A DNA stretch of 14,474 nt from Octopus sinensis (lineage: Eukaryota): positions 1 through 14,474 of the forward strand of contig NW_021825807.1 in the NCBI RefSeq assembly GCF_006345805.1, written 5' to 3'. This document shows positions 1 to 14,474 of the stretch, in pieces (position 1 is the stretch's first letter; every line of letters begins with the position of its first letter). The translations under genes and the position numbers were made by a program. The notes beneath the pieces are model-generated. The model saw only the letters and a list, made by a program, of their open reading frames with translations, did no database searches and had not been told where the DNA came from.

Positions 1-127
1 CCCAACCACATGGTCTCGGGTTCAGTCCCACTGCGTAGCAGATGGGACAATGCTTTCTACTAAAGACCCGAGCCGAATAATAAAGCCTTGTGAATGATTT
101 GGTTGGCTGAAACTGAAAAGAAACGCA

Positions 128-321: not shown

Positions 322-367
322 TTATATATACATATATATACATACATATATATATATATATATATAT
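322..367. repeat. (TA)n/(TACA)n microsatellite truncating the endonuclease fragment
   Basis: Directly visible; the minus-strand ORF turns into YIYIY after ...RFPEY. Confidence 0.95.
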
Positions 368-715
368 TCCGGGAAGCGGATTTGCTCTTTATGTAGAGTG
401 ATTCTCTTTCTCAAGGTCATACTCGTTTGTCCAATATAGTTGTATCCGCAACCCGAGCAGTTTATTACATAAATTAAGTTCTCAGAGGCACAAGTGAAAC
501 TAGTTTTAATTGTGAACCTCCGTCCGTGTAGGTTGGGGCAGGTTCCACAGTTTGGGCGTCCACATTTTTCAACCGTTGGTTTCGTGGTTGTTTTGTAAAA
601 GCCTCGCATTTGTTAGTAGTCTCTTTAGCGATTTGTCTTGCTTTTTGCATTTGATGAGTTTATGTATTTTCAGGATTTCGTTCATTTTTGGATCTCTAGT
701 TAGTAATTTCTCACC
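366..715 (-). mobile_element. Penelope-like retroelement (PLE) fragment: end of RT thumb/linker plus N-terminal GIY-YIG endonuclease, frameshifted, probably Neptune-type
   Basis: ORF 322..609(-) reads KCGRPNCGTC...FTCASENLIYVINCSGCGYNYIGQTSMTLRKRITLH: IY-x3-CxxC-x3-YIG, then R..H. This is the PLE GIY-YIG with two Cys between the motifs, preceded by a Cys-rich linker typical of Neptune-clade PLEs. ORF 569..787(-) supplies the upstream LIKCKKQDKSLKRLLTNAR, resembling the PLE 'YRRxxNLxxxL' linker motif. The frame changes at about 575-605. Confidence 0.9.
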
Positions 716-737
716 ATATATATATATATATATATAA
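716..737. repeat. (TA)n microsatellite
   Basis: Directly visible, abutting the 5' break of the PLE fragment. Confidence 0.95.
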
Positions 738-1217: not shown

Positions 1218-1323
1218 GGAGTAACCACGTAAATGTGAAACAAGGTGGAAAAAAGAGTACTCAAATACCAGTGGTTAGGAGAGTAATATGCTTTATTTTA
1301 AGCAGCAGAAAATTCAACAAAAT

Positions 1324-1361
1324 CTGTTACTCTGAGTTTCTCGTTGCCGTTCATCAGACAG
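1324..1361 (-). ncRNA. Minimal type I hammerhead ribozyme motif, mirror copy on the minus strand
   Basis: Exact reverse complement of 1378-1415. Confidence 0.82.
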
Positions 1362-1377
1362 TTTTTGTTAGCAAAAA

Positions 1378-1415
1378 CTGTCTGATGAACGGCAACGAGA
1401 AACTCAGAGTAACAG
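1378..1415 (+). ncRNA. Minimal type I hammerhead ribozyme motif (PLE-type)
   Basis: Stem I CTGT(1378-81)/ACAG(1412-15); core CTGATGA(1382-88); stem II A-CG-GCAA-CG-A with a GNRA loop; GAAA(1399-1402); near-palindromic stem III CTCAGAG; cleavage triplet GTA(1409-11). One deviation: A.A mismatch at positions 10.1/11.1. Confidence 0.82.
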
Positions 1416-1448
1416 ATTTTGTTGAATTTTCTGCTGCTTAAAATAAAG

Positions 1449-1479
<31 letters not shown>

Positions 1480-1606: not shown

Positions 1607-1710
1607 GGGAGAAATAATAACTTGAGATCCCAAAATGATCGACATCCTGAAAATACAAACTCATCAAATGCAAAAAGCGAGACAAATCGCTAAAGAGACT
1701 ACTAACTGCA
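1607..1710 (+). mobile_element. Second, shorter fragment of the same PLE (linker region), inverted relative to 366-715
   Basis: Aligns to the reverse complement of ~616-715 at roughly 90% by eye (GG-GAGAAAT...CTCATCAAATGCAAAAAGC.AGACAAATCGCTAAAGAGACTACTAAC), with small indels that break the frame. Confidence 0.88.
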
Positions 1711-1713
1711 AAA

Positions 1714-1740
1714 CTCATCGTCGTAACCGACGGAGTGCCA
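1714..1740 (+). mobile_element. Isolated 3'-tail fragment of the SINE family that hosts the satellite
   Basis: CTCATCGTCGTAACCGACGGAGTGCCA is homologous to 11080-11105 (CTCGGCATCGCAACCAACGGAGTACT) and to the monomer start (CTCATTGTGGTAACCAATAGGGAGCC). Confidence 0.7.
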
Positions 1741-1753
1741 GTCATCTTGCGAA

Positions 1754-2052
1754 GGATCATGGCTTAGTGGTTAGAGGTAATTCAGCTCATAATCGTAAGG
1801 TCGTGTGTTCGATTCCCGGCGACGCGTTCTGTCCTTGAGCAAGACACTTTATTTCACATTGCTCCTACCCACTCACCTGGCAGAAACGAGTAGTACCTGT
1901 AATTCACAAGGGGCCAGCCTGGTCACATTCAGTGTCACGCTGAATCTCCCCGAGAACTACGTTGAGAGTTCTCGTGTCTGCGGAGTACTCAGCCACTTGC
2001 ATATTAATTTCACGAGCAGGCTGTTCCGTGGATCGGATCAACTGGAACCCTC
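1754..2052 (+). mobile_element. tRNA-derived (CORE-like) SINE, head and body; interrupted by the satellite array
   Basis: A box TGGCTTAGTGG (1760-1770), B box TGTTCGATTCC (1806-1816), then TGTCCTTGAGCAAGACACTTTATTTCACATTGCTC (CORE-like). Its last 68 nt (1985-2052) are nearly identical to monomer positions 68-135. Confidence 0.88.
1760..1816 (+). promoter_or_regulatory. Internal RNA Pol III type-2 promoter (A and B boxes) of the SINE
   Basis: TGGCTTAGTGG fits TRGCNNAGYGG; GTTCGATTCC fits GTTCRANNCC; tRNA-like spacing. Confidence 0.75.
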
Positions 2053-5000
2053 ATTGTGGTAACCAATAGGGAGCCTGGCTAGACCCTTAGAACCACGTTA
2101 AGGTATGAGTGTCTATGGTGTACTCAGTCACTTGCATGTTAATTTCACGAGCAGGCTGTTCCGTGGATCGGATCAACTGGCCCCTCATTGTGGTAACCAA
2201 TAGGGAGCCGGGCTAGACCCTTAGAACCCGTTAAGGTATGAGTGTCTATGGTGTGTACTCAGCCACTTGCACGTTAATTTCACGAGCAGGCTGTTCCGTG
2301 GATCGGATCAACTGGAACCCTCATTGTGGTAACCAATAGGGAGCCGGGCTAGGACCCTTAGAACCACGTTAAGGTATGAGTGTCTATGGTGTACTCAGTC
2401 ACTTGCATGTTATTTCACGAGCAGGCTGTTCCGTGGATCGGATCAACTGGAACCCTCATTGTGGTAACCAATAGGGAGCCTGGCTAGACCCTTAGAACAC
2501 GTTAAGGTATGAGTGTCTATGGTGTACTCAGTCACTTGCATGTTAATTTCACGAGCAGGCTGTTCGTGGATCGGATCAACTGGAACCCTCATTGTGGTAA
2601 CCAATAGGGAGCCGGGCTACCCCTTAGAACCACGTTAAGGTATGAGTGTCTATGGTGTACTCAGTCACTTGCATGTTAATTTCACGAGCAGGCTGTTCCG
2701 TGGATCGGATCAACTGGAACCCTCATTGTGGTAACCAATAGGGAGCCTGGCTAGACCCTTAGAACCACGTTAAGGTATGAGTGTCTATGGTGTACTCAGT
2801 CACTTGCATGTTAATTTCACGAGCAGGCTGTTCCGTGGATCGGATCAACTGGAACCCTCATTGTGGTAACCAATAGGGAGCCGGGCTAGACCCTTAGAAC
2901 CACGTTAAGGTATGAGTGTCTATGGTGTACTCAGCCACTTGCACGTTAATTTCACGAGCAGGCTGTTCCGTGGATCGGATCAACTGGAACCTCATTGTGG
3001 TAACCAATATGGAGCCTGGCTAGACCTTAGAACCACGTTAGGTATGAGTGTCTATGGTGTACTCAGCCACTTGCACGTTAATTTCACGAGCAGGCTGTTC
3101 CGTGGATCGGATCAACTGGAACCCTCATTGTGGTAACCAATATGGAGCCTGGCTAGACCCTTAGAACCACGTTAAGGTATGAGTGTCTATGGTGTACTCA
3201 GCCACTTGCACGTTAATTTCACGAGCAGGCTGTTCCGTTGATCGGATCAACTGGAACCCTCATTGTGGTAACCAATAGGGAGCCGGGCTAGACCCTTAGA
3301 ACCACGTTAAGGTATGAGTGTCTATGGTGTACTCAGCCACTTGCACGTTAATTTCACGAGCAGGCTGTTCCGTGGATCGGATCAACTGGAACCCTCATTG
3401 TGGTAACCAATAGGGAGCCGGGCAAGACCCTTAGAACCACGTTAAGGTATGAGTGTCTATGGTGTACTCAGCCACTTGCATGTTAATTTCACGAGCAGGC
3501 TGTTCCGTGGATCGGATCAACTGGAACCCTCATTGTGGTAACCAATAGGGAGCCGGGCTAGACCCTTAGAACCACGTTAAGGTATGAGTGTCTATGGTGT
3601 ACTCAGCCACTTGCATGTTAATTTCACGAGCAGGCTGTTCCGTGGATCGGATCAACTGGAACCCTCATTGTGGTAACCAATAGGGAGCCGGGCTAGACCC
3701 TTAGAACCACGTTTAGGTATGAGTGTCTATGGTGTTCTCAGCACTTGCATGTTAATTTCACGAGCAGGCTGTTCCGTGGATCGGATCAACTGGAACCTCA
3801 TTGTGGTAACAATAGGGAGCCGGGCAAGACCCTTAGAACCACGTTAAGGTATGAGTGTCTATGGTGTACTCAGTCACTTGCATGTTAATTTCACGAGCAG
3901 GCTGTTCCGTGGATCGGATCAACTGGAACCCTCATTGTGGAACCAATAGGGAGCCGGGCTAGACCCTTAGAACACGTTAAGGTATGAGTGTCTATGGGTG
4001 TACTCAGTCACTTGCATGTTAATTTCACGAGCAGGCTGTTCCGTGGATCGGATCAACTGGAATCCTCATTGTGGTAACAATAGGGAGCCGGGCTAGACCC
4101 TTAGAACCACGTTAATTATGAGTGTCTATGGTGTACTCAGTCACTTGCATGTTAATTTCACGAGCAGGCTGTTCCGTGGATCGGATCAAATGGAACCCTC
4201 ATTGTGGTGCCAATAGGGAGCCGGGCAAGACCCTTAGAACCACGTTAAGGTATGGAGTGTCTATGGTGTACTCAGTCACTTGCATGTTAATTTCACGAGC
4301 AGGCTGTTCCGTGGATCGGATCAACTGGAACCTCATTGTGGTAACCAATAGGGAGCCGGGCTAGACCCTTAGAACCACGTTAAGGTATGAGTGTCTATGG
4401 TGTACTCAGTCACTGCATGTTAATTCACGAGCAGGCTGTTCCGTGGATCGGATCAACTGGAACCCTCATTGTGGTAACCAATAGGGAGCCGGGCAAGACC
4501 CTTAGAACCACGTTAAGGTATGAGTGTCTATGGTGTACTCAGTCACTTGCATGTTAATTTCACGAGCAGGCTCTGTTCCGTGGATCGGATCAACTGGAAC
4601 CCTCATTGTGGTAACCAATAGGGAGCCGGGAAGACCCTTAGAACCACTTTAAGGTATGAGTGTCTGGTGGTGTACTCAGTCACTTGCATGTTAATTTCAC
4701 GAGCAGGCTGTTCCGTGGATCGGATCAACTGGAACCCTCATTGTGGTAACCAATAGGGAGCCGGGCTAGACCTTAGAACCACGTTAAGGTATGAGTGTCT
4801 ATGGGTACTCAGTCACTTGCATGTTAATTTCACGAGCAGGCTGTTCCGTGGATCGGATCAACTGGAACCTCATTGTGGTAACCAATAGGGAGCCGGGCTA
4901 GACCCTTAGAACCACGTTAAGGTATGAGTGTCTATGGTTGTACTCAGTCACTTACATGTTATTTCACGAGCAGGCTGTTCCGTGGATCGGATCAACTGGA

Positions 5001-8000
5001 ACCCTCATTGTGGTAACCAATAGGGAGCCGGCTAGACCCTCAGAACCACGTTAAGGTATGAGGTCTATGGTGTACTCAGTCACTGCATGTTAATTTCACG
5101 AGCAGGCTGTTCCGTGGATCGGATCAACTGGAACCCTCATTGTGGTAACCAATAGGGAGCCGGGCTAGACCCTTAGAACCACGTTAAGGTATGAGTGTCT
5201 ATGGTGTACTCAGTCACTTGCATGTTAATTTCACGAGCAGGCTGTTCCGTGGATCGGATCAACTGGAACCCTCATTGTGGTAACCAATAGGGAGCCGGGC
5301 TAGACCCTTAGAACCACGTTAAGGTATGAGTGTCTATGGTGTACTCAGTCACTGCATGTTAATTCACGAGCAGGCTGTTCCGTGGATCGGATCAACTGGA
5401 ACCCTCATTGTGGTAACCAATAGGGAGCCGGGCTAGACCCTTAGAACCACGTTAAGGTATGAGTGTCTATGGTGTACTCAGTCACTTGCATGTTAATTTC
5501 ACGAGCAGGCTGTTCCGTGGATCGGATCAACTGGAACCCTCATTGTGGTAACCAATAGGGAGCCGGGCTAGACCCTTAGAACCACGTTAAGGTATGAGTG
5601 TCTATGGTGTACTCAGTCACTTGCATGTTAATTTCACGAGCAGGCTGTTCCGTGGATCGGATCGGATCACTGGAACCCTCATTGTGGTAACCAATAGGAG
5701 CCGGGCAAGACCTTAGAACCACGTTAAGGTATGAGTGTCTATGGTGTAACTCAGTCACTTGCATGTTAATTTCACGAGCAGGCTGTTCCGTGGATCGGAT
5801 CAACTTGGAACCCTCATTGTGGTAACCAATAGGGGCCGGGCAAGACCCTTAGAACCACGTTAAGGTATGAGTGTCTATGGTGTACTCAGTCACTTGCATG
5901 TTAATTTCACGAGCAGGCTGTTCCGTGGATCGGATCAACTGGAACCCTCATTGTGGTAACCAATAGGGAGCGGGCTTAGGACCCTTAGAACCACGTTAAG
6001 GTATGAGTGTCTATGGTGTACTCAGTCACTTGCATGTAATTTCACGAGCAGGCTGTTCCGTGGATCGGATCAACTGGAACCCTCATTTTGTGGTAACCAA
6101 TAGGGAGCCTGGCTAGACCTTAGAACCACGTTAAGGTATGAGTGTCTATGGTGTACTCAGTCACTTGCATGTTAATTTCACGAGCAGGCTGTTCCGTGGC
6201 TCGGATCAACTGGAACCCTCATTGTGGTGTAACCAATAGGGAGCGGGCTAGACCCTTAGAACCAGTTAAGGTATGAGTGTCTATGGTGTATCAGCCACTT
6301 GCCACGTTAATTTCACGAGCAGGCTGTTCCGTGGATCGGATCAACTGGAACCCTCATTGTGGTAACCAATATGGAGCCTGGCTAGACCCTTAGAACCACG
6401 TTAAGGTATGAGTGTCTATGGTGTACTCAGCCACTTGCACGTTAATTTCACGAGCAGGCTGTTCCGTGGATCGGATCAACTGGAACCCCATTGTGGTAAC
6501 CAATTGGAGCCTGGATAGACCCTTAGAAACCACGTTAAGGTATGAGGGTCTATGGTTTGGTTACTCAGCCACTTGCACGTTAATTTCACGAGCAGGCTGT
6601 TCGCGTGATCGGATCAACTGGAACCCTCATTGTGGTAACCAATAGGGAGCCGGGCTTTACCCTTAGAACCCGTTAAGGTATGAGTGTCTAGGTGTACTCA
6701 GCCACTGCACGTTAATTTCACGAGAGGCTGTTCCGTGGATCGGACCACTGGAACCCTCATTGTGGTAACCAATAGGGAGCCGGGCAAGACCCTTAGAAAC
6801 CACGTTAAGGTATGAGTGTCTATGGTGTGTACTCAGCCACTTGCATGTTAATTTCACGAGCAGGCTGTTCCGTGGATCGGATCAACTGGAACCCTCATTG
6901 TGGGTAACCAATAGGGAGCCGGGCTAGACCCTTAGAACCACGTTAAGGTATGAGTGTCTATGTGGTGTGTACTCAGCCACTGCATGTTAATTCACGAGCC
7001 AGGTGTTCCGTGGATCGGATCAACTGGAACCCTCATTGTGGTAACCAATAGGGAGCCGGGCTTACTAGACCCTTAGAAACCACGTTAAGGTATGAGTGTC
7101 TATGGTTTGTACTCAGCCACTTGCATGTTAATTCACGAGATTTCACGAGCGGCTGTTCGTGGATCGGATCAACTGGAACCCTCATTGTGGTAACCAATAG
7201 GGAGGCGGCAAGACCTTAGAACCACGTTAAGGTATGAGTGTCTATGGTGTCTGTCACTTGCATGTTAATTTCACGAGCAGGATGTTCCGTGGCTCGGATC
7301 AACTGGAACCCTCATTGTGGTAACCAATAGGAGCCGGCTAGACCCTTAGAACCACGTTAAGGTATGAGGGTCTATGGGGGTACTCAGTCACTTGCATGTT
7401 AATTTCACGAGCAGGCTGTTCCGTGGATCGGATCAACTGGAATCCTCATTGTGGTAACCAATAGGGAGCGGGCTAGACCCTTAGAACACCACGTTAATTT
7501 ATGAGTGTCTATGGTGTACTCAGTCACTTGCATGTTAATTTCACGAGCAGGCTGTTCCGTGGATCGGATCAACTGGAACCCTCATTGTTGGTAACCAATA
7601 GGGAGCCGGGCAAGGCAAGACCCTTAGAACCACGTTAAGGTATGAGTGTCTATGGTGTACTCAGTCACTTGCATGTTAATTTCACGAGCAGGCTGTTCCG
7701 TGGATCGGATCAACTGGAACCCTCATTGTGGTAACCAATAGGGAGCCGGGCTAGACCCTTAGAACACGTTAAGGTATGAGTGTCTATGGTGTACTCAGTC
7801 ACTTGCATGTTAATTTCACGAGCAGGCTGTCCGTGGATCGGATCAACTGGAAACCCTCATTGTGGTAAACCAATAGGAGCGCGGGCCACAGACCCTTAGA
7901 ACCACGTTAAGGTATGAGTGTCTATGGTGTACTCAGTCACTTGCATGTTAATTTCACGAGCAGGCTGTTCCGTGGATCGGATCAACTGGAACCCTCATTG

Positions 8001-11000
8001 TGGTAACCAATAGGGAGCCGGGCAAGACCCTTAGAACCACGTTAAGGTATGAGTGTCTATGGTGTACTCAGTCACTTGCATGTTAATTTCACGAGCAGGC
8101 TGTTCCGTGGATCGGATCAACTGGAACCCTCATTGTGGTAACCAATAGGGAGCCGGGCTAGACCCTTAGAACCACGTTAAGGTATGAGTGTCTATGGTGT
8201 ACTCAGTCACTTGCATGTTAATTTCACGAGCAGGCTGTTCCGTGGATCGGATCAACTGGAACCCTCATTGTGGTAACCAATAGGGAGCCGGGCTAGACCC
8301 TTAGAACCACGTTAAGGTATGAGTGTCTATGGTGTACTCAGTCACTTACATGTTAATTTCACGAGCAGGCTGTTCCGTGGATCGGATCAACTGGAACCCT
8401 CATTGTGGTAACCAATAGGGAGCCGGGCGACCCTCAGAACCACGTTAAGGTATGAGTGTATATGGTGCCTCAGTCACTTGCATGTTAATTTCACGAGCAG
8501 GCTGTTCCGTGGATGGATCAACTGGAAACCCTCATTGTGGTAACCAATAGGGAGCCGGGCTAGACCCTTAGAAACACGTTAAGGTATGAGTGTCTATGGT
8601 GTCTACTCAGTCACTTGCATGTTAATTCACGAGCAGGCTTTCCGTGGATCGGATCAACGGGAACCCTCATTGTGGTAACCATAGGGAGCCGGGCTAGACC
8701 TTAGAACCACGTTAAGGTATGAGTGTCTATGGTGTACTCAGTCACTTGCATGTTAATTTCACGAGCAGGCTGTTCCGTGGATCGGATCAACTGGAACCCT
8801 CATTGTGGGTAACCAATAGGGAGCGGGCTAGACCCTAGAACCACGTTAAGGTATGAGTGTCTATGGTGTACTCAGTCACTTCATGTTAATTTCACGAGCA
8901 GGCTGTTCCGTGGATCGGATCAACTGGAACCCTCATTGTGGTAACCATAGGGAGCCGGGCTAGACCCTAGAACCATTAAGGTATGAGTGTCTATGGTGTA
9001 CTCAGTCATTGCATTAATTTCACGAGCAGGCTGTTCCGTGGATCGGATCAACTGGAACCCTCATTGTGGAACCAATAGGGAGCGGGGCAAGACCCTTAGA
9101 ACCACGTTAAGGTATGAGTGTCTATGGTGTACTCAGTCACTTGCATGTTAATTTCACGAGCAGGCTGTTCCGTGATCGATCAACTGGAACCCTCATTGTG
9201 GTAACCAATAGGGAGCCGGGCAAGCCCTTAGATTAAACCACGTTAAGGTATGAGTGTCTATGGTGTACTCAGCCACTTGCATGTTATTTCACGAGCAGGC
9301 TGTTCCGTGGATCGGATCAACTGGAACCTCATTGTTGTGGTAACCAATAGGGAGCCGGGCAAGACCCTTAGAACCACGTTAAGGTATGAGTGTCTATGGT
9401 GTACTCAGTCACTTGCACGTTAATTTCACGAGCAGGCTGTTCCGTTGATCGGATCAACTGGAACCCTCATTGTGGTAACAATAGGGAGCCGGGCTAGACC
9501 CTTAGAATTAACGTGTAAGGTAGTGTCTATGGTGTACTCAGTCACTTGCATGTTAATTTCACGAGCAGGCTGTTCCGTGGATCGGATCAACTGGAACCCT
9601 CATTGTGGTAACCAATAGGGAGCCGGGCAAGACCCTTAGAACACACGTTAAGGTATGAGTGTCTATGGTGTACTCAGTCACTTGCATGTTAATTTCACGC
9701 AGGCGTTGTTCGTGGATCGGATCAACTGGACCCCTCATTGTGGTAACCAATAGGGAGCGGGCTAGACCCTTAGAACCACGTTAAGGTATGAGTGTCTATG
9801 GTGTACTCAGCCACTTGCATGTTAATTTCACGAGCAGGCTGTTCCGTGGATCGGATCAACTGGAACCCTCATTGTGGTAACCAATAGGGAGCCGGGCTAG
9901 ACCCTTAGAACCACGTTAAGGTATGAGTGTCTATGGTGTACTCAGCCACTTGCATGTTAATTTCACGAGCAGGCTGTTCCGTGGATCGGATCAACTGGAA
10001 CCCTCATTGTGGTAACCAATAGGGAGCCGGGCTAGACCCTTAGAACCACGTTAAGGTATGAGTGTCTATGGTGTACTCAGTCACTTGCATGTTAATTTCA
10101 CGAGCAGGCTGTTCCGTGGATCGGATCAACTGGAACCCTCATTGTGGTAACCAATAGGGAGCCGGGCTAGACCCTTAGAACCACGTTAAGGTATGAGTGT
10201 CTATGGTGTACTCAGTCACTTGCACGTTAATTTCACGAGCAGGCTGTTCCGTGGATCGGATCAACTGGAACCCTCATTGTGGTAACCAATAGGGAGCCTG
10301 GCTAGACCCTTAGAACCACGTTAAGGTATGAGTGTCTATGGTGTACTCAGTCACTTGCATGTTAATTTCACGAGCAGGCTGTTCCGTGGATCGGATCAAC
10401 TGGAACCCTCATTGTGGTAACCAATAGGGAGCGGGCAAGACCCTTAGAACCACGTTAAGGTATGAGTGTCTATGGTTTTGTACTCAGTCACTTGCATGTT
10501 AATTTCACGAGCAGGCTGTTCCGTGGATCGGATCAACTGGAACCCTCATTGTGGTAACAATAGGGAGCGGGCTAGACCCTTAGAACCACGTTAAGGTATG
10601 AGTGTCTATGGTGTACTCGCCACTGCACGTTAATTTCACGAGCAGGTGTTCCGTGGATCGGATCAACAGCAACCCTCATTGTGGTAACCAATAGGGAGCC
10701 GGGCTAGACCCTTAGAACCACGTTAAGGTATGAGTGTCTATGGTGTACTCAGCCACTTGCATGTTAATTTCACGAGCAGGCTGTTCCGTGGATCGGATCA
10801 ACTGGAACCCTCATTGTGGTAACCAATAGGGAGCCGGGCTAGACCCTTAGAACCACGTTAAGGTATGAGTGTCTATGGTGTACTCAGCCACTTGCACGTT
10901 AATTTCACGAGCAGGCTGTTCCGTTGATCGGATCAACAGCAACCCTCATTGTGGTAACCAATAGGGAGCCGGGCTAGACCCTTAGAACCACGTTAAGGTA

Positions 11001-11082
11001 TGAGTGTCTATGGTGTACTCAGCCACTTGCATGTTAATTTCACGAGCAGGCTGTTCCGTTGATCGGATCAACTGGAACCCTC
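2053..11082 (+). repeat. SINE-derived tandem satellite, 135-bp monomer, 67 copies
   Basis: Consensus ATTGTGGTAACCAATAGGGAGCCGGGCTAGACCCTTAGAACCACGTTAAGGTATGAGTGTCTATGGTGTACTCAGTCACTTGCATGTTAATTTCACGAGCAGGCTGTTCCGTGGATCGGATCAACTGGAACCCTC. Clean units start at 10006, 10141 and 10276. I counted 67 monomer starts from 2053 to 10948. Confidence 0.98.
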
Positions 11083-11105
11083 GGCATCGCAACCAACGGA
11101 GTACT
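11083..11105 (+). mobile_element. 3' tail of the host SINE resuming after the array
   Basis: After the last GGAACCCTC the sequence reads GGCATCGCAACCAACGGAGTACT, resembling the tail at 1714-1740 rather than the monomer. Confidence 0.75.
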
Positions 11106-11137
11106 GGTAAAAGGTCAACCGCGATCATACAAACTCA

Positions 11138-11700
11138 TGTAGTAGTAGTAGTAGTAGTAGCAGCAGCAATTTCAGTAGTTGAGGTTGTTGACGGAATGGT
11201 TGGAGCTGGTGATGGTGGTGGTGGTGGTTGTGGTGGTGGTTTTGGTGATGGTGGTGCGACTGTTTTGTGCCTGTTGTAGTTGAGGAAGTAGTGGTAGCCG
11301 GTGGTGGCGGAGGTGGTTTCGGTGGTAGTGGAAGAAGCGGTGGAAGTGGGGGAGGTGGCTCTTGTTGCAGTTGTTGTTGGTGGTGGTGGCTGTGGTTGTG
11401 GTGGCTGTGGTTGTGGTGGTGGTGGTGTTGGTGGTAGTAGTGGTGGTGGTGGTGGTGGTGGTGATGGTAATGGTGGTGCGACTATTTTGTGCGTGTTGTA
11501 GTTGAGGAAGTAGTGGTAACCGGTGGTGGCGGAGGTGGTATCGGTGGTAGTGGAAGAAGCGGTGGAAGTGGGGGAGGTGGCTCTTGTTGCTGGCTTTGCT
11601 GTTGGTGGTGGTGGCGGTGGTTGTGGTGGTGGTGGTGTTGGTGGTATTAGTGGTGGTGGTGGTGGTGGTGGCTGGTAGAAGGAGCGGGTGGTGGTGTTGG
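11138..11700. repeat. (TAG)n/(GGT)n/(GTT)n low-complexity region with a 222-bp direct duplication
   Basis: Trinucleotide runs; 11249-11368 recurs at 11471-11590 with few substitutions. Confidence 0.92.
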
Positions 11701-11799
11701 AAGTGGTGGCGTGTTACAGTTGTAGAGAAGAATTTTATTGCTTTTGGAAATCAAGCAGCGATTAAACGAAACAAAACAAAATAAGCAAAATATTAAACA

Positions 11800-12751
11800 T
11801 CCATTTATATAGTGTGTGTGTATATAATTGTGTATATATGTGTGAGCATATAGATACATATATATATATATACATGTATACACACATATATATACACGCT
11901 TAAGACTGTTAAGTAGGAAAATATATTTATATAAAAATATAACTACACACGTAAACATATTTTAATATCACATATATATATATATATATATGTGTGTACA
12001 CATATGTATACATATGTATATATTAATATGTATATATACATATATATATTATATATATATATACATTTCTTCATATATATGTTGTATATTCATGTATATA
12101 TATATGTATATTATATATGTACATATATATACATATATATGTATACATATATGAACATACATATATGTATGTGTGTTTGTATTGAATTTAAATGTACATA
12201 TTGTACGTATATGTGTATCTGTATATATATATATATATATATATCATATATATATATGTAAATATAAATATACATATATATAACATATATATTCATATAT
12301 GTATATATATATGTATATATATATAATTATATATAATATATATATATATATATTATATTCATATATGTATATATATATGATATCTATATATATATATATA
12401 TTCATATATGTATATATATATGTATATAATATATTATATATATATATATAATATATATATATAATATATATATATATATTAATATATATTATATATATAT
12501 ATATATATATTATATATGTATAATGTATATATGTATATATACGTGTATTTATCGCCCTGTATGCAAATCTGTTGAAACGTGTGAACACATGATATACTGC
12601 AACGATTATCTGTGAATTAAGCTCATCCATATTCATGCAAATATGCTTTATCTCCTAAAAAATAAGTATATTATTGTGTATATACACACGCGTATATATA
12701 CATTATAATATACATATGTATACACACATATATATACATATATATATATAC

Positions 12752-12801
<50 letters not shown>

Positions 12802-13065
12802 TAAATATATATATATGTACATGTAGATATGTAAAAAAATATAAAGAGTTGTATGTATATATATGTGTGTATACATATGTATATATATATGTAGGTATAT
12901 ACACATTTTCCATGTGTTCATAGTTGCATAATTATGCATATACGCATGTATAAGTTTATATACATACCTATTGGTTTTATAGATAGAAAAATTTCTATGA
13001 ATATCTATACATCTGAATGTATATCTATGAATCTCTCCATATCTCCATATATATACATGTATATA

Positions 13066-13135
<70 letters not shown>

Positions 13136-13210
13136 TATATCTGTATATATATATATATATATATGTATATTATATATGTAAATATATATATATATATATA
13201 ATATATATAT

Positions 13211-13246
<36 letters not shown>

Positions 13247-13790
13247 GTATATATACGTATATATGTAAATCATTTTATATATATCTTTGCAATGAAATCT
13301 AATGAAATGTATATATATAACTTTGTTTTTGCAGTGTATATGTGTATTTATGTATATATGTTATATATATATATATAGATATGTGCGTGGGTGCTTATAC
13401 ATACATACTTCTTACATGTATATATATATATATTCCAATATACGCATCATTATATATATATGCATATTGTTATAGGTGTCTATCTACACACACGCACACA
13501 CACACACATACACACACATATATATATGCGTACTCACACATCTAACCATAACTGCACGCACTCACGCACGCATATATACGCATACACACATATGTAGCGT
13601 TTTGTGTTTACATATGTATATGTATATTCATTTGTATTCATAATCACGTACAGACAAATACACACACACAGATATATAGCATACACGCACATGCATACAT
13701 ACATACATACGCACTTATCTATGTATTGATACAGCTATACAGTGACACACACACACACACTCACACATACAATCACAGACACATATAAGC
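11800..13790. repeat. Long degenerate (TA)n/(TG)n/(CA)n microsatellite field with short complex islands
   Basis: Directly visible; source of all the IY-repeat ORFs. Confidence 0.95.
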
Positions 13791-13797
13791 GTATATT

Positions 13798-13999
13798 CTC
13801 TTATTCGCTGCTGTTATTTGGACGGGGCCATGCTGGAGCACCGCCTTTCTAGTCGAGCAGACCGACTCCAGGACTTATTCTTTGTAAACTTGGTACTTAT
13901 TTTATCGGTCTATTTTGGCGAACTGCTAAGTTACTGGGAACGTAAACACACCATTATTGGTTGTCAAGTGATGGTGGAGGGATAAATGCAGACACACAA
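13798..13999 (-). mobile_element. 3' half of an Octopus-type SINE
   Basis: GGCCATGCTGGAGCACCGCCTT..AGTCGAGCA..CCAGGACTTATTCTTTGTAA..GTACTTATT..ATCGGTC..GCTAAGTTAC..GTAAACACACC matches my recollection of the 3' half of the SINE whose 5' half is at 1-130; no promoter boxes in this piece. Confidence 0.65.
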
Positions 14000-14114: not shown

Positions 14115-14328
14115 TCTTTACTGCCCACAAGGGGCTAAACATAGAGGGGACAAACAAGGACAAAGGAATCACAATGACCCCAGTTAAAAATGGTACTTTA
14201 TTTATCGACCCCGAAAGGATGAAAGGCAAACTCGACCTCGGCGGAATTTGAACTCAGAACGTAACGACAGACGAAATACCGCTAAACATTTCGCCCGGTG
14301 CGCTAACGTTTCTGCCAGCTCGCCACCT
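14115..14328 (-). mobile_element. Near full-length tRNA-derived SINE of a different family
   Basis: Minus strand: A-box-like TGGCAGAAACGTTAG (14303-14317), B box GAGTTCAAATTCC (14243-14255), then GCCTTTCATCCTTTCGGGGTCGATAAATAAAGTACC, a central-domain motif I recall from many metazoan SINEs. Flanked by (TA)n. Confidence 0.85.
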
Positions 14329-14474
14329 TTATATATTTATATTTATATATATAATATATATACATATATATATTTATGTATACATACATATATATACACA
14401 TATATATATTTTTATCTATAAGTTAGAAGTTCGTGTTGGTGTTATGCCTAGGGTGCCATTATTTGGTTTTGTAC

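What the first reader, a model, noticed from the sequence alone, without database searches (positions are those of the whole stretch)
1754..11105. A SINE inflated to 9.3 kb by a satellite made from its own 3' end
Seen: structure is head-body-X-(Y-X)67-tail. X (68 nt, 1985-2052) is shared with the host SINE. Y (67 nt) is a diverged SINE tail (cf. 1714-1740, 11083-11105) fused to a diverged body segment (cf. ~1946-1984). Established: satellites can arise from SINE/LINE parts. Inference: a satellite's birthplace or landing site is captured with both host ends intact. The layout fits local amplification of the 3' half or integration of a circular (Y-X)n multimer by recombination in X. I do not know of a description of this family, but cannot search.
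Basis: partly seen in the sequence, partly recalled or inferred. Interest (0 to 1): 0.78.

Follow-up and report, generated by a model that had tools for sequence, protein, structure and literature searches.

The report
SINE-derived 135-bp satellite array in octopus
A short mobile element (SINE) in what is almost certainly an octopus genome has had its last ~135 bases copied head-to-tail about 67 times into a 9-kb satellite-like array. This is a clean invertebrate example of a TE-to-satellite transition already described in lizards and snakes.

Summary
A 135-bp tandem array (67 full units plus a 67-nt partial unit, 1974/1986-11082) lies between a SINE-like 5' part (1754-1985, with Pol III A and B boxes) and a 25-nt SINE-like tail (11083-11107). 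The monomer aligns collinearly with the last ~125 nt of the SINE obtained by joining the two flanks, so it is SINE-derived.

There is a sharp step in similarity. Segment X matches the host at 66/68 positions. The two halves of Y match their host counterparts at only 26/38 and 12/21 (Fisher p = 3e-6). Inside the array, X and Y vary equally.

I think the array most likely grew in place by unequal exchange or gene conversion. That process homogenises everything except the outermost, non-exchangeable ends. The window alone cannot exclude import of a pre-formed array by recombination in X.

No other copy of this SINE or monomer could be reached in any collection, so the decisive genome-wide tests are still open. 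The other SINE-like repeats in the window match Octopus genomic loci.

The kind is already known. SINE-derived satellites of squamates (Vassetzky 2023) include a gecko unit of ~130 nt made of the central and 3'-terminal SINE parts, and rare loci with both SINE termini. Verdict: real, tidy, a new member of a known kind, moderately interesting.

The parts
1714..1741 (+). Tail-like fragment (CTCATCGTCGTAACCGACGGAGTGCCAG), 12 nt upstream of the SINE head. It is either the 3' end of a second, truncated SINE copy or the left copy of a long target duplication.
   Evidence: It is the best hit in all non-array sequence for both the right tail and the monomer tail. It matches 11075-11107 at 20/28 positions without gaps (read from the two sequences printed).
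1754..1826 (+). SINE head with Pol III A box (1760-1770, TGGCTTAGTGG) and B box (1807-1816, GTTCGATTCC).
   Evidence: These are the only A-box and relaxed B-box matches in the window. No tRNA was called by ARAGORN or Rfam.
1827..1947 (+). SINE body with no counterpart in the monomer.
   Evidence: No significant similarity to the B-X-T unit.
1948..1985 (+). Host segment B, the counterpart of the 3' part of Y (26/38 identical).
   Evidence: Collinear alignment.
1986..2053 (+). First X (X of monomer 1), 66/68 identical to the array consensus. The differences are at position 8 (C, polymorphic in the array) and position 18 (A, private).
1986..11015 (+). 67 full 135-bp monomers (X 68 nt + Y 67 nt).
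6289..7380 (+). Most diverged block of the array (m33-m40, 83-94% to consensus). It carries the C8/C17 variants and an AGA insertion in alternate units (m34, m36, m38).
11016..11082 (+). Last, partial unit (X only). It has T at position 45, which restores a GTTGATC-G-GATCAAC palindrome and hairpin that the array consensus has lost.
11083..11107 (+). SINE tail (GGCATCGCAACCAACGGAGTACTGG), the counterpart of the 5' part of Y (12/21 identical).

Best explanation
This is a SINE-derived satellite-like array. A ~324-nt element with a Pol III A/B-box head (a tRNA-type SINE of an octopus) has had its 3'-terminal ~135 bp (segment B, segment X and the tail) turned into a head-to-tail repeat. The repeat grew in place to 67.5 units (9.1 kb). 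The inferred steps are as follows. (1) A first tandem duplication of the 3' unit. It may have come from a 5'-truncated copy inserted directly behind a full copy, from reverse-transcriptase template switching, or from a slipped or unequal exchange. The unit's junction falls within a few bases of where the two tail copies in the window stop resembling each other, that is, at the likely 3' terminus. (2) Expansion by unequal sister-chromatid exchange or replication slippage, partly in blocks of several units. (3) Concerted evolution of the interior. An exchange needs homology on both sides. The left-most B has only unique SINE body to its left, and the right-most tail has only unique flank to its right. 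These two segments can therefore never be replaced and have drifted to 68% and 57% identity, while the first and last X are still overwritten by their neighbours. No cellular function is implied. The array behaves as neutral repetitive DNA.
For: Shown: the array and its phase. Shown: collinear homology of the monomer to the last ~125 nt of the joined SINE. Shown: A and B boxes only at 1760 and 1807. Shown: a step in divergence, X 2/68 mismatches against B+T 21/59, Fisher p = 3e-6. Inside the array X and Y are equally variable (1.49 and 1.46 substitutions per column), so X is not intrinsically slow-evolving. The first X differs from the array consensus only in its left third (positions 8 and 18). 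The last X shares the polymorphic C at position 8 and has its two non-polymorphic differences in its right part (positions 45 and 68). This is what fixed outer boundaries predict. Variants occur in runs (C8/C17 in m3, m8-13, m33-39, m59-60, m65-68; AGA insertion in m34/36/38), as block-wise exchange predicts. The last two units keep T45, which completes a 7+7 palindrome and an 11-bp hairpin (z = -2.0). The array consensus has lost this hairpin (z = 0), so an ancestral SINE-like state survives at the edge. There is no exact repeat longer than 289 bp, so no sign of a recent large copy-paste. Precedent: squamate sSats have the same architecture and are explained by duplication plus concerted evolution (PMC10702118).
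Against: The step in identity is abrupt (3 mismatches within the 6 nt just left of X) rather than graded. The most diverged, variant-rich block lies in the middle of the array (m33-m40), not only at the edges. The monomer tail is closer to the upstream fragment 1714-1741 (15/20) than to the host's own right tail (11/20) (my count on the sequences). No family consensus could be obtained, so no substitution in B or T can be polarised. No target-site duplication was identified. The tRNA origin of the head is not confirmed by ARAGORN or Rfam.
Confidence: 0.55

Rival explanations
1. Import. The 135-bp satellite evolved elsewhere, from another copy or subfamily of the same SINE. It entered this SINE copy by homologous recombination or gene conversion within X, for example by integration of a circular (Y-X)n multimer.
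For: One reciprocal crossover between positions 18 and 45 of X explains all edge states. The host-private A18 occurs only in the first X, and T45 and G68 occur in the last X. It also explains the abrupt step from 97% to 57-68% identity, and why the monomer tail is no closer to the host tail than to the unrelated fragment 1714-1741.
Against: It needs X to have stayed ~97% identical between satellite and SINE while B and T diverged by 32-43%, yet X shows no lower variability inside the array. T45 is also present in unit 67 and C8/C17 in units 65-67. That looks like a gradient of SINE-like states, not the edge of a homogeneous insert. No second locus of the satellite was found, although only about 24 kb of non-orthologous octopus DNA could be searched.
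Confidence: 0.2
2. The retrotransposed unit was already a SINE variant with an internal duplication (head-body-X-Y-X-tail). The internal repeat expanded after insertion, so many loci would show arrays inside complete SINEs.
For: Both SINE ends are present. Squamate sSat families number hundreds to thousands of loci with SINE-terminal units. There is no TTTT Pol III terminator in the SINE or in the consensus monomer; the first lies at 6086.
Against: No such dimeric subfamily is known to me or was found. No target-site duplication was recognised. The idea is untestable without other copies.
Confidence: 0.1
3. The array exists, but its length or its linkage to both flanks is an assembly artefact (mis-joined or over-expanded long-read consensus).
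For: Indels are frequent, enriched in homopolymers (61/90), and transversions outnumber transitions. Both are typical of uncorrected long reads.
Against: Variants form ordered runs, both junctions are in phase with one collinear SINE, and there are no long exact duplicates.
Confidence: 0.07
4. The direction is reversed. The satellite came first, and the SINE family acquired its 3' ~135 nt from one satellite unit.
For: The homologous SINE region is about one unit long and ends at the SINE terminus. This fact is symmetrical with respect to direction.
Against: The hairpin-forming palindrome is intact only in rare and edge units and is broken in the array consensus. The SINE body upstream shows no trace of a preceding unit. 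TE-to-satellite is the documented direction.
Confidence: 0.03

Closest known systems
SINE-derived satellites (sSat) of squamate reptiles, especially gecko sSat3Gja1 (Vassetzky, Kosushkin & Ryskov 2023, PMC10702118)
   Same: The unit is made from part of a tRNA-type SINE. sSat3Gja1 is ~130 nt and covers the central plus 3'-terminal part. Arrays carry a longer terminal unit reaching the SINE terminus, and minor variants have both termini. Long loci are the most homogeneous (up to 94%). Locus-specific subvariants often alternate.
   Different: The host phylum differs (cephalopod mollusc, not reptile) and the SINE is unrelated. Here the edge segments B and T are far more diverged from the monomer than X is. 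Number of loci, chromosomal position and species range are unknown.
Double-insertion model of satellite birth from transposable elements (McGurk & Barbash 2018, PMC5932611, cited)
   Same: A tandem pair of TE pieces gives the substrate for unequal exchange. Here a tail-like piece abuts the SINE head 12 nt upstream (1714-1753), and the monomer junction joins a SINE 3' end to an internal SINE position.
   Different: That model was shown in Drosophila, largely for LTR and non-LTR elements. I cited the paper but did not read it. Tandem insertion is inferred here, not shown.
Satellite arrays carried by Helitron/Helentron and MITE-like elements in bivalve molluscs (reviewed in PMC12692304)
   Same: A mollusc, with short-to-long arrays embedded in a non-autonomous mobile element.
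   Different: The carrier here has Pol III A/B boxes. It has no terminal inverted repeats around the array, and the monomer is the carrier's own 3' sequence rather than a cargo repeat.
tRNA-related tandem repeats of amphibians (Xenopus satellite 1/OAX, newt PolIII/TAN), as reviewed in PMC10702118
   Same: Tandem repeats linked to Pol III-type sequence.
   Different: In those repeats the unit contains the tRNA-like promoter, and no parent SINE is established. Here the unit lacks the head and the parent element is adjacent.
SVA (SINE-VNTR-Alu) composite elements of hominids (from my own knowledge)
   Same: A non-autonomous retroelement with an expandable internal tandem repeat between two element-derived ends.
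   Different: The SVA VNTR is 35-50 bp, the whole composite is the mobile unit, and it is Pol II/L1-driven. A 9-kb array is far beyond a mobile SINE.

Membership tests
SINE (tRNA-type) | Internal Pol III promoter: A box and B box at the 5' end with proper spacing | tested here: met
   TGGCTTAGTGG at 1760 matches TRGCNNAGTGG exactly. GTTCGATTCC at 1807 matches 10/11 of GGTTCGANNCC. The spacing is 47 nt, and these are the only such sites in the window.
SINE (tRNA-type) | Head recognisably derived from a tRNA (cloverleaf or covariance model) | tested here: not met
   ARAGORN finds no tRNA. Rfam gives no tRNA hit at E<=1 on the window or at E<=10 on 1745-1840. This copy may be too decayed.
SINE (tRNA-type) | Length 80-500 bp once the array is removed | tested here: met
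   The joined flanks 1754-2052 + 11083-11107 give 324 nt.
SINE (tRNA-type) | Many dispersed copies flanked by target-site duplications | tested here: inconclusive
   Only one extra tail-like fragment is in the window, and no clear target duplication. There is no copy in 3 orthologous 24-kb Octopus loci. All collection scans were empty.
SINE (tRNA-type) | 3' region with a stem-loop or LINE-derived module | tested here: inconclusive
   The last X folds into an 11-bp hairpin with z = -2.0, and 6 of 200 shuffles fold as well. No partner LINE was available for comparison.
SINE-derived satellite (sSat sensu Vassetzky 2023) | Tandem unit homologous to a portion of a SINE | tested here: met
   The monomer aligns collinearly with SINE positions 194-318.
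SINE-derived satellite (sSat sensu Vassetzky 2023) | Terminal unit extended to the SINE terminus | tested here: met
   On the left the array continues into the body and head (1754-1985). On the right it ends in the tail (11083-11107).
SINE-derived satellite (sSat sensu Vassetzky 2023) | Multiple loci in the genome, homogeneity rising with array length | not testable with these tools
   No eukaryotic genome collection can be searched by DNA.
Satellite DNA in the strict sense | Long head-to-tail arrays of a >100-bp unit | tested here: met
   67.6 copies of 135 bp, 9.1 kb.
Satellite DNA in the strict sense | High genomic abundance and heterochromatic (centromeric or subtelomeric) location | not testable with these tools
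   Needs the whole assembly, read depth or FISH.
Self-cleaving tandem repeats / retrozymes (hammerhead-bearing) | Hammerhead or other ribozyme motif in each unit | tested here: not met
   No ribozyme family among the 70 Rfam matches at E<=1. All hits are low-complexity miRNA-model noise outside the array.
MITE/Helentron-borne satellite | Terminal inverted repeats or Helitron ends bracketing the array | tested here: not met
   The best inverted match between 1600-1985 and 11083-11400 scores at the shuffle mean.

The most novel reading that the evidence does not exclude
The 135-bp repeat is a multi-locus satellite family that spreads through the octopus genome by using dispersed SINE copies as landing pads, recombining in the shared X segment (possibly from extrachromosomal circles). 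Alternatively, it rides on a retrotransposing SINE variant with an internal duplication. Either way the SINE family would seed satellite arrays at many sites, and this window would show one such event with both junctions preserved.
Probability: 0.15. Interest if true: 0.65.

Novelty: new member of a known kind. Interest (0 to 1): 0.4.

Why it matters
Direct links between interspersed and tandem repeats are still few. The 2023 squamate study states that earlier SINE-satellite cases were inconclusive, and that it was unknown whether such satellites exist outside squamates. A cephalopod case would show that the SINE-to-satellite route is general. This locus is unusually legible because both junctions, the parent element and edge variants are all present in one contig. 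It could therefore serve to measure how far homogenisation reaches at array edges. Octopus genomes are rich in SINEs, and their repeat dynamics are debated. It is one locus, with no sign of function.

Tried and rejected
1. External copies. I searched the SINE ORF and the GIY-YIG ORF against the protein collection. I scanned exact 22-26-mers of X and of the SINE body in viral, metagenome and genome contigs. I searched sequence words in papers and in one supplement set. All were empty.

2. Octopus DNA through rhodopsin. This fetched three orthologous 24-kb loci (O. vulgaris, O. bimaculoides, O. sinensis). They contain the window's other three SINE-like repeats, which supports an octopod origin. 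They contain no copy of the host SINE or monomer, so no family consensus could be built.

3. tRNA identity of the head: not detected.

4. Ribozyme or other structured RNA in the monomer: none. The monomer fold is no better than shuffles (z = -0.4).

5. Coding potential: every frame of the consensus has stops, and the longest array ORF is 80 aa.

6. Higher-order repeat: identity does not peak at any lag from 2 to 12. TRF's 402-bp period is just a multiple of the monomer.

7. Older internal duplication in the SINE body: not significant.

8. Terminal inverted repeats around the array: none.

9. Target-site duplication: only an unexplained 12-mer, ATACAAACTCAT, at 1653 and 11127.

10. Constraint on X as the cause of its conservation: rejected inside the array, where X and Y vary equally.
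Full report
**Observation.**
- Tandem Repeats Finder reports a single array at 1974-11082 with period 135, 67.6 copies, 94% matches and score 15950.
- Walking a monomer along the sequence and aligning the pieces gives 67 full units (1986-11015) and a last unit of 67 nt (11016-11082).
- The 135-nt consensus is TACTCAGTCACTTGCATGTTAATTTCACGAGCAGGCTGTTCCGTGGATCGGATCAACTGGAACCCTCA (X, 68 nt) followed by TTGTGGTAACCAATAGGGAGCCGGGCTAGACCCTTAGAACCACGTTAAGGTATGAGTGTCTATGGTG (Y, 67 nt).
- GC content is flat at 0.48-0.50 across the array and drops in both flanks.

**The carrier.**
- Upstream of the array, 1754-1985 carries the only exact Pol III A box of the window (TGGCTTAGTGG, 1760) and the only B-box-like site (GTTCGATTCC, 1807).
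- Joining 1754-2052 to 11083-11107 gives a 324-nt element.
- ARAGORN and Rfam do not recognise a tRNA in the head, even in a 96-nt search. 'tRNA-derived' therefore rests on the promoter boxes only.
- The consensus monomer aligns collinearly with positions 194-318 of the joined element. The 3' part of Y matches body segment B (1948-1985) at 26/38. X matches at 66/68. The 5' part of Y matches the tail (11083-11107) at 12/21.
- The monomer is thus the 3'-terminal ~135 nt of a SINE-like element, closed on itself.
- A third tail-like piece lies at 1714-1741, 12 nt before the head. It is the best match of both the right tail and the monomer tail in all non-array sequence (p = 0.007 and 0.057 against shuffled queries). 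BLAST does not report it.

**Organism.**
- From memory the flanking repeats looked like octopus SINEs. I tested this by fetching Octopus genomic DNA around the rhodopsin gene: O. vulgaris OX597836.1, O. bimaculoides CM046623.1 and O. sinensis CM016881.1.
- The window's three other SINE-like pieces (1-125, 13815-13990, 14120-14330) have 11 hits at 73-95% identity in the O. vulgaris locus alone. The window is very probably octopod.
- The host SINE and the monomer have no hit in these loci.
- They also have no hit in any collection I could scan or in sequence-word searches of the literature. No independent copy of this SINE family was obtained.

**Inside the array.**
- Mean pairwise identity is 92.7% with gaps and 95.9% for substitutions only.
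- Deletions are enriched in homopolymer context (61 of 90 against 47% expected), and transversions outnumber transitions (111:88). Part of the variation is likely long-read consensus error.
- Real variants occur in runs. C at position 8, often with C at 17, is found in m1, m3, m8-13, m33-39, m55, m59-60 and m65-68. T at 91 occurs mainly in m1-m9. An AGA insertion appears in alternate units m34, m36 and m38.
- The block m33-m40 is the most diverged, at 83-94% to the consensus.
- There is no higher-order period: identity by lag is flat at 0.92-0.93. There is no exact repeat longer than 289 bp.
- X and Y are equally variable among units (1.49 and 1.46 substitutions per column).

**The step at the edges.**
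- The host differs from the monomer at 2 of 68 positions in X but at 21 of 59 in B plus T (Fisher p = 3e-6).
- The first X differs from the array consensus only at positions 8 and 18, in its left third. The last X differs at 8, 45 and 68.
- T45 in the last two units completes the palindrome GTTGATC-G-GATCAAC and an 11-bp hairpin (z = -2.0). The G45 of the array consensus abolishes it (z = 0). By this internal argument T45 is the older, SINE-like state and survives at the right edge.

**Interpretation.**
- Two histories give exactly this layout.
- (a) In-situ growth. The 3' unit was duplicated, expanded by unequal exchange, and homogenised. An exchange needs homology on both sides, so the left-most B and the right-most tail can never be replaced and drift apart, while the edge X segments continue to be overwritten.
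- (b) Import. A satellite that evolved elsewhere from the same SINE family recombined with this copy inside X. One crossover between positions 18 and 45 accounts for every edge state.
- I favour (a) at about 0.55 for three reasons. X shows no constraint that would keep it 97% identical over the time needed for 32-43% divergence in B and T. SINE-like states form a short gradient at the right edge (m65-m68). It is also the mechanism supported for the closest known systems.
- Points against (a): the step is abrupt, the most variant-rich block is central, and the monomer tail is no closer to the host's own tail than to the fragment at 1714-1741.
- The unit's junction (…GGGAGCCGGG|CTAGACCC…) lies within a few bases of where the two tails stop resembling each other. 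A tail-like piece also abuts the SINE head. Both hint that the seed was a tandem insertion or a template switch at the SINE 3' end. This is inference.
- If 1714-1741 and 11083-11107 are instead the two copies of a long target duplication, the 'tail' is host DNA and the array must be local. Only genome-wide copies can tell.
- Other readings, with my confidence in each: a retrotransposed SINE variant with an internal duplication (0.1), an assembly artefact in length or linkage (0.07), and a reversed direction, satellite to SINE (0.03).

**Function.**
- Nothing suggests a function. All six frames of the consensus are closed. There is no Rfam family in the array. The monomer folds no better than shuffles.
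- One curiosity: there is no TTTT between the Pol III head at 1754 and 6086. A transcript started at the head would have no canonical terminator for 4.3 kb. This is untested.

**Comparison with known systems.**
- Vassetzky et al. 2023 (PMC10702118) describe SINE-derived satellites in 56 squamate genomes.
- The gecko sSat3Gja1 unit, ~130 nt, corresponds to the central and 3'-terminal part of Squam3. Most arrays have a longer terminal unit reaching a SINE terminus, and minor variants have both termini. Long loci reach 94% homogeneity, and alternating subvariants are common.
- The authors call earlier SINE-satellite claims inconclusive and say it is uncertain whether such satellites exist outside squamates.
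- The present locus meets the testable criteria of that class (unit from a SINE part, terminal units extended to both termini). The number of loci and the chromosomal position cannot be tested here.
- The octopus and cephalopod papers I searched and read did not mention a SINE-derived satellite.
- I therefore file it as a new member of a known kind.

**Verdict.** Interest 0.4.

Noticed in passing
window 1286-1453: Near-perfect palindrome with 82-nt arms (1286-1367 and 1372-1453), 99% complementary, 4-nt spacer. It attracts spurious miRNA-model hits (mir-3618, mir-980).
   Followed up: partly
window 612-721 and 1599-1706: Inverted repeat of about 110 nt (80-93% complementary) bracketing a 1.1-kb stretch made of microsatellites and the palindrome. 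It looks like a foldback or TIR-type element. Its right end lies 7 nt before the tail-like fragment.
   Followed up: partly
window 322-609, minus strand: 95-aa ORF with a Cys-rich motif followed by a GIY-YIG domain (Pfam PF01541, E = 7.6e-4, just below the cutoff). From my own knowledge this resembles the endonuclease end of a Penelope-like retroelement. It has no relatives in the protein collection.
   Followed up: partly
window 1-125, 13815-13990, 14120-14330: Three other SINE-like fragments. Each has several 73-95% matches in the 24 kb around the Octopus vulgaris rhodopsin gene, which places the window in an octopod genome. They share nothing with the host SINE.
   Followed up: yes
window 1653-1664 and 11127-11138: The 12-mer ATACAAACTCAT occurs inside the right arm of the inverted repeat and again 20 nt after the SINE tail. 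AAACTCAT also abuts the tail-like fragment at 1711. Chance expectation is about 1e-3. It could be a remnant of a target duplication or rearrangement.
   Followed up: partly
window 11140-11715: (TAG)7(CAG)3 followed by a G-rich (TGG)n region organised as 2.1 copies of a 222-bp unit at 87% identity. GC skew is +0.55. The minus strand would read as Pro/His/Thr runs. Whether it is an exon is unknown.
   Followed up: no
window 11972-13284: 1.3 kb of degenerate (AT)n / (TGTATATA)n with GC of 10-21%. Together with the (CA)n and (AT)n runs at 129-367, 1101-1215 and 1449-1619, the non-array sequence is largely microsatellite.
   Followed up: no
window 1754-6086: No TTTT on the plus strand from the Pol III-type head until 6086. 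The consensus monomer contains no terminator.
   Followed up: no
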